DNA of 61,622 bases, counting the filler, from Platydemus manokwari (Eukaryota): NCBI GenBank assembly GCA_037951405.1. It is 5 parts of 5 records of this genome, joined end to end, with 100 filler letters (N's around TTAATTAATTAA, not from the genome) between each part and the next. Parts side by side here need not be neighbours in the genome. Positions count along the whole stretch, not along the records: positions 1 to 16,931 come from JBBMOY011132550.1; 4 more parts are not named here. One strand, given 5' to 3'. The notes below the pieces were generated by a model that searched no databases, was not told where the DNA came from, and was given only the letters and a program-made list of their open reading frames with translations. The position numbers and the translations under genes are program-made. Positions 1 through 642 of the stretch are shown in pieces (the first letter of the stretch is position 1; each line of letters starts with the position of its first letter).

Positions 1-642
1 CGAATGTTCAAAAGCAGCATTGAGAATAGCGTTATGTTCAATACAACCCTCGTGTTTAGAGCCACCTTTTTGACCTCTATTAAGCAAGTCATTGTCTTTA
101 ATCCAATGTTTTAATCGTCTAGTCAAAATTGAAGAAAAAATCTTATATGAAGTCAACAAGAGAGCTATTGGTCGCCATTTGCTGATATTTTTATATTGAC
201 CATCTTTACCAGGCTTTGGAATGAGGGTTTGTAATCTGTAGCTTCTTTCATGATTTATCCCAATTACTTTGTATGGGCCTTCATATCTTCCCTGATCATT
301 ATTCCTCATCTCTTTCTTTATTAGCACCTGATCTCCTTTTTTGAATATTTGTTTAGTTGTTGCTTTTCTAACATTATTTTGTTTTTCGTCCATTTTCTTC
401 TTTAACTCGTCTCTGTCTATTCTACTATATGCTTGCCATTGTAATCTGTCTATCTTCTGTTGGACTGACCTACATCGTAAACTTTCACTTGTATATTCGA
501 TTTCTACCTGTTCGAGTGTCTCTAATACCATCTTATTCATGACGTTTACTCTTGCGCCCGTGTCTAACAAGCATTCAAATTCTTTATTCCCAACATAAGG
601 ATGAATTAGATAATGATAAAAATATCTCTTGTTTACATAAAT
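1..642 (-). mobile_element. Chimeric retroelement reading frame: gypsy-type aspartic protease fragment + integrase GPY/F tail + non-LTR (RLE-clade-like) RT start; runs off the window
   Basis: Manual translation of 642->1 has no stop: ...EFECLLDTGARVNVMNK (retropepsin DTG) ...KKGDQVLIKKEMRNNDQGRYEGPYKVIG (GPY/F module) ...LIPKPGKDGQYKNISKWRPIALLLTSYKIFSSILTRRL...QKGG..EGCIEHN (non-LTR RT N-terminal motifs). Missing from the ORF track because its stop lies outside the window. Confidence 0.85.

What the first reader, a model, noticed from the sequence alone, without database searches (positions are those of the whole stretch)
1..642. Stop-free three-way chimera of LTR protease, LTR integrase tail and non-LTR reverse transcriptase
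Seen: 214 consecutive minus-strand codons without a stop, continuing past the window edge. They carry a retropepsin half (LLDTGA, ~600-470), a gypsy integrase C-terminal GPY/F module (~470-229) and then directly LIPKPGK..WRPIALL..YKIFSSIL..QKG..GCIEHN. Known: the last motifs mark the start of non-LTR RTs of the restriction-like-endonuclease clades (R2/NeSL-like), which normally lack protease and integrase; R2-type RTs can template-jump. Inference: both junctions are in frame and undamaged while the other TE relics here are full of stops. It is therefore either a young template-switch or nested-insertion chimera, or a maintained fusion ORF. It lies head-to-head with LUC7 (~0.9 kb from its ATG) and could share its promoter. 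Caveats: in-frame junctions can arise by chance, and there is no in-frame ATG before DTG (first Met at 540).
Basis: partly seen in the sequence, partly recalled or inferred. Interest (0 to 1): 0.72.

Follow-up and report, generated by a model that had tools for sequence, protein, structure and literature searches.

The report
Dead mosaic of retrotransposon fragments
The long stop-free frame at the contig end is a one-off patchwork of pieces from two abundant retrotransposon families that happen to join in frame, so it is ordinary genomic debris and not a new fusion gene.

Summary
The minus strand 642->1 is open for 214 codons, and it reads protease N-third, integrase C-tail, then the start of a reverse transcriptase (RT). 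The pieces are fragments of high-copy repeats:
- 1-229: NeSL/R2-like non-LTR RT start, 89-95% identical to many copies.
- 229-471: C-terminal tail of a Ty3/gypsy-like integrase.
- 472-590: protease of the same LTR family.
- 596-890: an older unclassified repeat, which supplies the first ~15 codons.

No other contig in the 911-Mb assembly spans any junction, so this is a single-copy arrangement. The protease and integrase pieces come from one LTR element with an internal deletion. It is therefore two elements, not three. That junction is also damaged: 15 nt are read out of their native frame, next to a 17-nt deletion.

Each piece lacks most of its domain, and there is no ATG before the DTG motif. 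Copy-private substitutions look neutral (10 non-synonymous, 4 synonymous). Open frames of 200-350 codons are common among relics of the non-LTR family.

Best reading: a 5'-truncated NeSL-like copy nested in a decayed gypsy relic, in frame by chance (about 1 in 9). A template-jump origin is possible. A maintained fusion ORF is unsupported.

The parts
1..229 (-). 5'-truncated copy of a NeSL/R2-like non-LTR retrotransposon. It starts exactly at RT motif 1 (LIPKPGK) and runs off the contig end.
   Evidence: 89-95% DNA identity to many contigs, and every match stops at place 229. 150 scored protein matches out of 1460 candidates. RVT_1 profile positions 1-50. Family copies read ...FKTT before LIPKPGK where the window reads ...RLQT.
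229..456 (-). C-terminal (GPY/F-type) tail of a Ty3/gypsy-like integrase. It is cut about 27 codons before the pol stop codon.
   Evidence: 88-91% identity to at least 30 contigs, all bounded at 228 and 456. In L023 the same tail directly follows an rve core domain. Family copies continue ...RLQNGKG... past the break.
457..471 (-). 15-nt patch (sense AGGTCAGTCCAACAG) between the protease and integrase pieces. It is read out of its native frame and lies beside a 17-nt deletion flanked by AAG repeats.
   Evidence: 14/15 match to integrase sequence 17 nt further upstream in L009. Alternatively a 12/12 match to protease-downstream sequence in L047. The string GTCAGTCCA occurs in both places of the element.
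472..590 (-). N-terminal third of the retropepsin of the same LTR family (NKEFECLLDTGA...SLRC).
   Evidence: 93-95% identity to many copies, all bounded at 472 and 589. It covers only profile positions 5-33 of 90-92. The full protease in L023 scores above Pfam cut-offs.
596..890 (.). Older unclassified interspersed repeat ('repeat D'), truncated at about 596. It supplies the stop at 645-643 and the first ~15 codons of the open frame.
   Evidence: 74-76% identity to many copies, with a shared end near 886-890. Longer copies reach at least 1.3 kb. No Pfam match.
891..1552 (.). Single-copy spacer between the TE mosaic and the LUC7 start codon.
   Evidence: Window 885-1700 matches only itself in the genome.
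1553..1614 (+). LUC7 exon 1 (MSATHQMRTMLDELMGTARD, GT donor at 1615). Further exons lie at 1902-2147, 5164-5487 and 5909-6064.
   Evidence: Sequence read directly. PF03194 matches on the + strand.

Best explanation
Window 1-890 is a single-copy nest of dead transposable-element fragments.

Proposed order of events (inferred):
1. An old repeat (596-890) was interrupted by a Ty3/gypsy-like element.
2. That element lost its 5' part and the roughly 2.5 kb between the protease N-third and the integrase tail.
3. A NeSL/R2-like non-LTR element, 5'-truncated at the start of its RT as is usual for target-primed reverse transcription, then landed in the integrase tail. It sits in the same orientation, with a 2-nt microhomology at the junction.

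The frame is open because each piece is a fairly young copy of a coding sequence. Each piece is open only in its native phase, and the two joins happened to keep that phase (about 1/3 x 1/3). It encodes nothing functional: a third of a protease, an integrase tail without its core, and an RT that lacks everything upstream of motif 1.

Shown: the mosaic, the family assignments, the uniqueness of the junctions, the neutral-looking private changes. Inferred: the order of events and the nested-insertion route.

I put about 0.85 on 'non-functional one-off mosaic' whatever the route. I put 0.55 on nested insertion plus deletions specifically; the confidence given here is for that specific route.
For: 1. 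**Matches break at the junctions.** Genome self-searches give matches that end exactly at 229, 456, 472 and 589. Only the window's own contig spans any junction.
2. **Protease and integrase tail belong to one LTR family.** L023 has both in the same order and on the same strand, with RT_RNaseH_2 and rve between them and a different internal deletion. L052 has yet another ~55-nt deletion. Internal deletions are therefore common in this family.
3. **Junction A is a typical 5' junction of a truncated non-LTR insertion.** The two parents overlap by 2 nt (sense AA). Many family matches begin part-way into these 76 aa, which is consistent with frequent 5' truncation.
4. **Each piece is open only in its native phase.** Stop counts in the three phases are 0/4/12, 0/8/9 and 0/5/4.
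5. **Private changes look neutral.** There are 14 copy-private substitutions, 10 non-synonymous and 4 synonymous. The neutral expectation is about 74% non-synonymous and 6% stop, so roughly 0.9 stops would be expected.
6. **Similar open frames are common in dead copies.** Relics of the same non-LTR family often have open frames of 200-357 codons.
7. **No matching protein.** No protein of 0.55-1.75x the length matches the 214 aa.
8. **Another nest of the same two families exists.** It is in L022, in the opposite relative orientation.
9. **The stumps are severe.** The protease covers profile positions 5-33 of ~90. The RT starts at profile position 1, whereas relatives carry about 770 aa upstream.
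Against: - The protease stump abuts the old repeat with no LTR or gag between them. The nested route therefore needs an extra deletion.
- All three pieces share one orientation. They are also ordered as successive 5'-ward jumps along templates would leave them, which a one-step template-jump origin explains more economically.
- The open frame is the longest in the 16.9-kb piece.
- The contig ends at place 1, so the rest of the non-LTR copy and the expected gypsy remainder beyond it cannot be seen.
- The private-substitution count is small (14) and rests on only 7-15 sampled copies per piece.
Confidence: 0.55

Rival explanations
1. One-step chimeric retrocopy made by template jumping. During target-primed reverse transcription of NeSL-like RNA, the RT left its own template at RT motif 1. 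It continued on a gypsy RNA at the integrase tail, skipped 5'-ward again (by 17 nt, then by about 2.5 kb to the protease). The cDNA end was then joined to the target DNA inside old repeat D. The product was dead on arrival, and its open frame is still chance.
For: - All pieces lie in one orientation. Their 3'-to-5' order matches successive jumps that always move 5'-ward on the template.
- Microhomologies are short: 2 nt, 3 nt (AAG) and 0 nt.
- No LTR or gag lies between the protease stump and the flanking old repeat.
- Bipartite and tripartite chimeras from single and double template switches during LINE reverse transcription are documented in fungi and mammals (PMC2104539).
- From my own knowledge, not tested here: R2 RT jumps templates readily in vitro.
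Against: - Such chimeras are far rarer than plain nested insertions.
- Internal deletions of this gypsy family occur independently elsewhere (L023, L052). The protease-integrase join therefore needs no foreign RT.
- A 5'-truncated insertion into pre-existing gypsy DNA gives exactly the same junction A.
- No second chimera of this type was looked for or found.
- No target-site duplication or 3' end is visible.
Confidence: 0.27
2. Assembly or library artefact: the first ~600 bases of the contig are chimeric reads or mis-joined repeat reads at a contig end, in a very fragmented assembly (1.99 million contigs).
For: - The mosaic lies at the very end of the contig.
- It consists only of high-copy repeats.
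- Its junctions occur nowhere else in the assembly.
- Read support could not be checked.
Against: - The parents share only 0-3 nt at the junctions. An assembler has no overlap on which to mis-join them.
- Three or four independent chimeric reads within 600 nt, all in the same orientation, would be needed.
- The pieces carry their own private substitutions and are not exact copies of any other contig.
- A contig that breaks inside a high-copy repeat is the normal reason for a contig end.
Confidence: 0.07
3. A maintained or exapted fusion ORF, possibly transcribed from a bidirectional LUC7 promoter, that makes a protease-integrase-RT fusion protein or a regulatory product.
For: - 214 open codons in a 26% GC genome, the longest open frame in the piece.
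- Both joins are in frame.
- It lies head-to-head and 911 nt from the LUC7 ATG, with unique sequence between.
Against: - There is no ATG before the DTG motif.
- Only a third of the protease is present, and there is no integrase core.
- The RT lacks all N-terminal parts present in relatives.
- Five codons are read out of their native frame.
- Private changes are 10 non-synonymous to 4 synonymous.
- It is a single copy, and no similar protein was found.
- Comparable open frames are common in dead copies.
Confidence: 0.04

Closest known systems
Nested transposable-element insertion: a 5'-truncated non-LTR copy inside a decayed LTR retrotransposon
   Same: - Sharp breaks between fragments of different high-copy families.
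- A 5' truncation of the non-LTR element with 2-nt microhomology.
- Internal deletions of the LTR element.
- A single-copy arrangement and neutral-looking private changes.
   Different: The two joins happen to preserve one reading frame over 214 codons. The far side (non-LTR 3' end, target-site duplication, gypsy remainder) cannot be seen because the contig ends.
Chimeric retrogenes or retropseudogenes formed by RT template switching during LINE reverse transcription (bipartite and tripartite chimeras; PMC2104539)
   Same: - Several RNA-derived pieces fused head-to-tail in one orientation.
- The LINE part lies at the 3' side.
- The joins are abrupt.
   Different: - Known cases involve APE-type LINEs (L1, MGL) with small RNAs, SINEs or mRNAs as 5' partners. 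Here the 3' part is an RLE-type NeSL-like element and the partner is LTR-retrotransposon RNA.
- The defining flanking direct repeats and 3' tail could not be checked.
NeSL / Utopia group of restriction-like-endonuclease non-LTR retrotransposons (R2 superfamily)
   Same: [quoted passage not shown] This is the layout described for nematode NeSL and for Utopia-1_TSP (PMC4640811).
   Different: - The window holds only 76 aa of the RT.
- The family here is high-copy and dispersed. Its target specificity, the hallmark of the group, was not examined.
- No phylogeny was made.
Ty3/gypsy (Metaviridae-like) LTR retrotransposon pol
   Same: Family copy L023 has the order protease, RT-RNase H connection, rve core, then a GPY/F-type tail with a weak SH3_Tf2-1 match.
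   Different: The window keeps only about 39 aa of the protease and about 76 aa of the integrase tail. LTRs and an intact RT of this family were not examined.

Membership tests
RLE-clade non-LTR retrotransposon (R2/NeSL-like) | Non-LTR-type RT domain | tested here: met
   The window piece aligns to RVT_1 profile positions 1-50 (E 0.004, below cut-off because it is so short). Relatives at 60-67% identity score RVT_1 at 91-104 bits. R2 proteins are the best solved-structure matches (E 2.6e-55), against 1e-23 for L1 ORF2p.
RLE-clade non-LTR retrotransposon (R2/NeSL-like) | C-terminal CCHC motif plus a restriction-like (PD-(D/E)xK) endonuclease, and no N-terminal APE endonuclease | tested here: inconclusive
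   In relative L037 I read CRRCNVEVETLTHVLQSC followed by ...RVDLYIED...ADIKC by eye. There is no Exo_endo_phos hit. No profile test of the RLE domain was run. In the window copy this region lies beyond the contig end.
RLE-clade non-LTR retrotransposon (R2/NeSL-like) | [quoted passage not shown] | tested here: met
   Peptidase_C48 at E 2.3e-9, 37.9 bits, above cut-off, in L037 residues 89-187. Near-full-length close copy L040 also aligns to residues 1-146. This holds for relatives only; it is absent from the window copy.
RLE-clade non-LTR retrotransposon (R2/NeSL-like) | Site-specific insertion into a repeated target | not tested
   Only two 3' ends were seen (L040, L052). Flanks were not surveyed.
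Ty3/gypsy-like LTR retrotransposon | pol order PR-RT-RH-IN with a retropepsin DTG/DSG motif and an rve core | tested here: met
   L023 has Asp_protease_2/RVP, an RT_RNaseH_2 fragment, rve (52.8 bits) and then the tail, all on one strand. The RT itself is deleted in that copy.
Ty3/gypsy-like LTR retrotransposon | Flanking long terminal repeats | not tested
   A polypurine-like run followed by TG... is visible after pol in several copies. LTR pairs were not sought. There is no LTR next to the window's fragment.
Template-switch chimeric retrocopy | Pieces from different RNAs in the same orientation, with the retroelement at the 3' side | tested here: met
   The sense order is protease, integrase tail, NeSL-like RT, all on the minus strand.
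Template-switch chimeric retrocopy | The whole chimera flanked by one target-site duplication, with a single 3' end | not testable with these tools
   Place 1 is the contig end.
Functional or domesticated fusion gene | Complete domains, a start codon, purifying selection, and conservation or expression | tested here: not met
   - Domains are stumps.
- There is no ATG before DTG.
- Private changes are 10 non-synonymous to 4 synonymous.
- The arrangement is unique in the assembly.
- No similar protein was found.
- Expression is untested.

The most novel reading that the evidence does not exclude
The block 1-590 was made in one retrotransposition event. A restriction-like-endonuclease (NeSL-like) RT jumped in vivo from its own RNA onto an LTR-retrotransposon RNA and skipped along it. 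This would be a natural multi-jump chimera by an R2-superfamily enzyme. Less likely still, the resulting in-frame ORF is transcribed from the LUC7 bidirectional promoter.
Probability: 0.25. Interest if true: 0.35.

Novelty: new member of a known kind. Interest (0 to 1): 0.12.

Why it matters
It matters little. It is a useful caution that, in a very AT-rich genome, a long open frame across TE fragments can be inherited from young coding relics and kept in frame by chance.

Two things have modest value:
- The genome holds a large, partly intact family of NeSL-like elements with a Ulp1-like protease domain.
- If long reads showed a single target-site duplication around the whole block, it would be a natural example of template jumping by an R2-superfamily RT, enzymes now used for genome engineering.

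Tried and rejected
- **Reads and RNA.** Junction read support and transcription are untested.
- **Extending leftwards.** This is impossible: place 1 is the first base of contig C1132550, and no other contig overlaps it at identity (best 96% over 196 nt).
- **Protein word search with the 214 aa.** No hit at E <= 0.001. This only covers proteins of 118-374 aa.
- **Target-site test.** I asked whether repeat D (596-890) is the regular target or flank of the NeSL-like or gypsy families, which would have favoured a one-step insertion. There was no match between repeat D and 17 NeSL-bearing or 16 gypsy-bearing loci.
- **Classifying repeat D.** No Pfam domain in its open frames.
- **A partly junction-spanning hit.** C1802705 matched 460-514. 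It proved to be an independent ~55-nt deletion inside the protease, not the window's junction.
- **Equal piece sizes.** The two pieces 1-228 and 229-456 are equally long. I rejected this as meaningless because the left bound is only the contig end.
- **Consensus.** Comparisons were copy by copy only.
- **Search for the far-side junction.** I considered a pattern search for the NeSL 3' end followed by the gypsy remainder. I dropped it: only two 3' ends are known, and copy divergence of 5-10% makes exact patterns unreliable.

Full report
**1. Observation**

The minus strand of window 642->1 is open for 214 codons after a TAA at 645-643. It reads ...NKEFECLLDTGARVNVMNKM...SLRC | RSVQQ | KIDRLQ...EGPYKVIG...RLQT | LIPKPGK...WRPIALL...YKIFSSIL...QKGG...GCIEHN.... 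It ends only because place 1 is the first base of contig C1132550. The assembly has 911 Mb in 1.99 million contigs.

It is the longest open frame in the 16.9-kb piece; the next has 151 codons. At 26% GC a random frame of this length has P of about 5e-9. The openness is therefore inherited from coding sequence and is not noise.

On the pieces alone Pfam gives only sub-threshold hits: RVT_1 positions 1-50 at E 0.004, and gag-asp_proteas positions 5-33 at E 0.018 (0.0036 for the piece alone).

LUC7 exon 1 starts at 1553 on the + strand, with further exons at 1902-2147, 5164-5487 and 5909-6064. The frame therefore opens 911 nt from the LUC7 ATG. Places 885-1700 are single-copy.

**2. Anatomy**

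Searching the organism's own genome with 1-700 and 440-1000 gives hundreds of candidates. Their matches break at the same places:

| Places | What it matches | Identity |
|---|---|---|
| 1-229 | one repeat family (non-LTR RT start) | 89-95% |
| 228-456 | a second family (integrase tail) | 88-91% |
| 472-589 | protease stretch | 93-95% |
| 596-890 | an older repeat ('repeat D') | 74-76% |

Short queries laid across each junction (190-269, 425-514, 550-639) are matched end to end only by the window's own contig. Every other hit stops at the junction. The arrangement is thus single-copy in this assembly.

**3. What the families are**

*LTR family.* L023 (C1343849) carries the 472-589 sequence and the 228-456 sequence on one strand and in the same order. 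Between them lie an RT_RNaseH_2 fragment and an rve integrase core (52.8 bits). Its full protease passes the Asp_protease_2, gag-asp_proteas and RVP cut-offs.

The 'protease' and 'integrase tail' are therefore two parts of one Ty3/gypsy-like family. The window's join between them is an internal deletion of the RT, RNase H and integrase core. L023 itself lacks the RT through a different deletion. L052 has an independent ~55-nt deletion in the protease. Such deletions are evidently common in this family.

*Non-LTR family.* The 1-229 piece belongs to a high-copy non-LTR family with 1460 first-look candidates.
- A relative with an intact 1531-aa ORF (L037) has an N-terminal Peptidase_C48 (Ulp1-like) domain and RVT_1 with YADD. 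It also has a C-terminal CCHC motif followed by a PD-(D/E)xK-like stretch, and no APE endonuclease hit.
- Its best matches among solved structures are R2 proteins (E 2.6e-55), against 1e-23 for L1 ORF2p.
- This layout is the one described for NeSL and Utopia-1_TSP (PMC4640811).

*Repeat D.* It has a shared end near 886-890 and is at least 1.3 kb long in other copies. It has no Pfam match.

**4. The junctions**

- **Junction A (229).** Family copies of the non-LTR element read ...FKTT|LIPKPGK, while gypsy copies read ...SYRLQ|NGKG.... The window switches within ...TTACAAA/AACCCTC..., with 2 nt shared by both parents. The gypsy pol is cut about 27 codons before its stop. The non-LTR element is cut exactly at RT motif 1 and lacks about 770 aa present in relatives.
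- **Junction B (456-472).** Protease homology ends at ...TTTACGATGT. A 15-nt patch, AGGTCAGTCCAACAG, follows, and then the integrase tail resumes at AAGATAGAC. The patch matches integrase sequence lying 17 nt further upstream (14/15 to L009), which implies a 17-nt deletion between AAG repeats. It equally matches a stretch about 55 nt downstream in the protease (12/12 to L047). The string GTCAGTCCA occurs in both places. Either way, five codons are read out of their native frame, so this join is not 'undamaged'.
- **Junction C (590-596).** The protease stump abuts truncated repeat D, with no LTR or gag between.

**5. Is the open frame more than chance?**

- Each piece is open only in its native phase. 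Stop counts in the three phases are 0/4/12, 0/8/9 and 0/5/4. Two joins that keep phase have a chance of about 1/9.
- The window has 14 substitutions seen in none of the 7-15 sampled copies of each piece: 10 non-synonymous and 4 synonymous.
- The neutral expectation is about 74% non-synonymous, 19% synonymous and 6% stop. About 0.9 new stops would be expected, so having none is unremarkable.
- Among relics of the same non-LTR family, open frames of 200-357 codons are frequent.
- No protein of comparable length resembles the 214 aa.
- There is no ATG before DTG. The protease covers a third of its fold, the integrase core is absent, and the RT lacks its N-terminal half.

Nothing indicates maintenance.

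**6. How it arose (inference)**

*Favoured route (about 0.55).* A gypsy copy sat in old repeat D and then lost its 5' part and its middle. A 5'-truncated NeSL-like copy later inserted into the integrase tail in the same orientation. Junction A is exactly what target-primed reverse transcription with microhomology-mediated 5' joining leaves behind. Another nest of the same two families exists in L022, in the opposite orientation.

*Rival route (about 0.27).* A single event in which the NeSL-like RT jumped from its RNA to gypsy RNA and then skipped 5'-ward along it. This accounts for three things:
- the common orientation,
- the 5'-ward order of the pieces,
- the missing LTR at junction C.

It has precedent in tripartite LINE chimeras (PMC2104539). 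Such events are much rarer than nesting, however, and the far side of the insertion cannot be seen.

*Artefact (about 0.07).* An assembler has no overlap on which to mis-join parents that share 0-3 nt. Three or four chimeric reads in a row would be needed.

*Maintained fusion ORF (about 0.04).* See section 5.

**7. Limits**

Read support and transcription are untested.
- The contig end prevents any view of the rest of the non-LTR copy.
All comparisons were copy by copy.

**8. Verdict**

This is an ordinary one-off TE mosaic of low interest.

Noticed in passing
L037:239-4831 (G000:C725206); also C1507525, C1118052, C1130886, C291893 listed: A NeSL-like non-LTR family with an N-terminal Ulp1/Peptidase_C48 domain is high-copy in this genome. 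It includes apparently intact ORFs of 1000-1537 aa. RLE-clade elements are usually site-specific, and this family's targets were not examined.
   Followed up: partly
window 596-890; L012-L020: An unclassified interspersed repeat, 74-76% identical to many copies. It has a shared end near 886-890, is at least 1.3 kb in longer copies, and has no Pfam match in its open frames.
   Followed up: partly
L052:790-831 (G000:C1802705) and L023 (G000:C1343849): Other copies of the gypsy-like family carry independent internal deletions: about 55 nt in the protease of L052, and the whole RT in L023. The 9-nt string GTCAGTCCA recurs in the protease and integrase regions and may favour such deletions.
   Followed up: partly
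L022:3101-3960 (G000:C112789): A NeSL-like RT fragment (residues ~749-970) abuts an antisense fragment of the same gypsy-like family at about 3771. This is a second nest of the two families.
   Followed up: no
window 1553-6064 (+): A LUC7-like gene with at least four exons and a ~3-kb intron between 2147 and 5164. Five other contigs carry LUC7-domain matches, some apparently intronless over profile positions 2-241. Whether those are paralogues or retrocopies was not checked.
   Followed up: no
window 9255-9707 (+): A 151-codon open frame (ATG ORF 9315-9710, 131 aa) with no Pfam match.
   Followed up: partly
window ~15860-16070: A run of N (an assembly gap) inside the piece.
   Followed up: no
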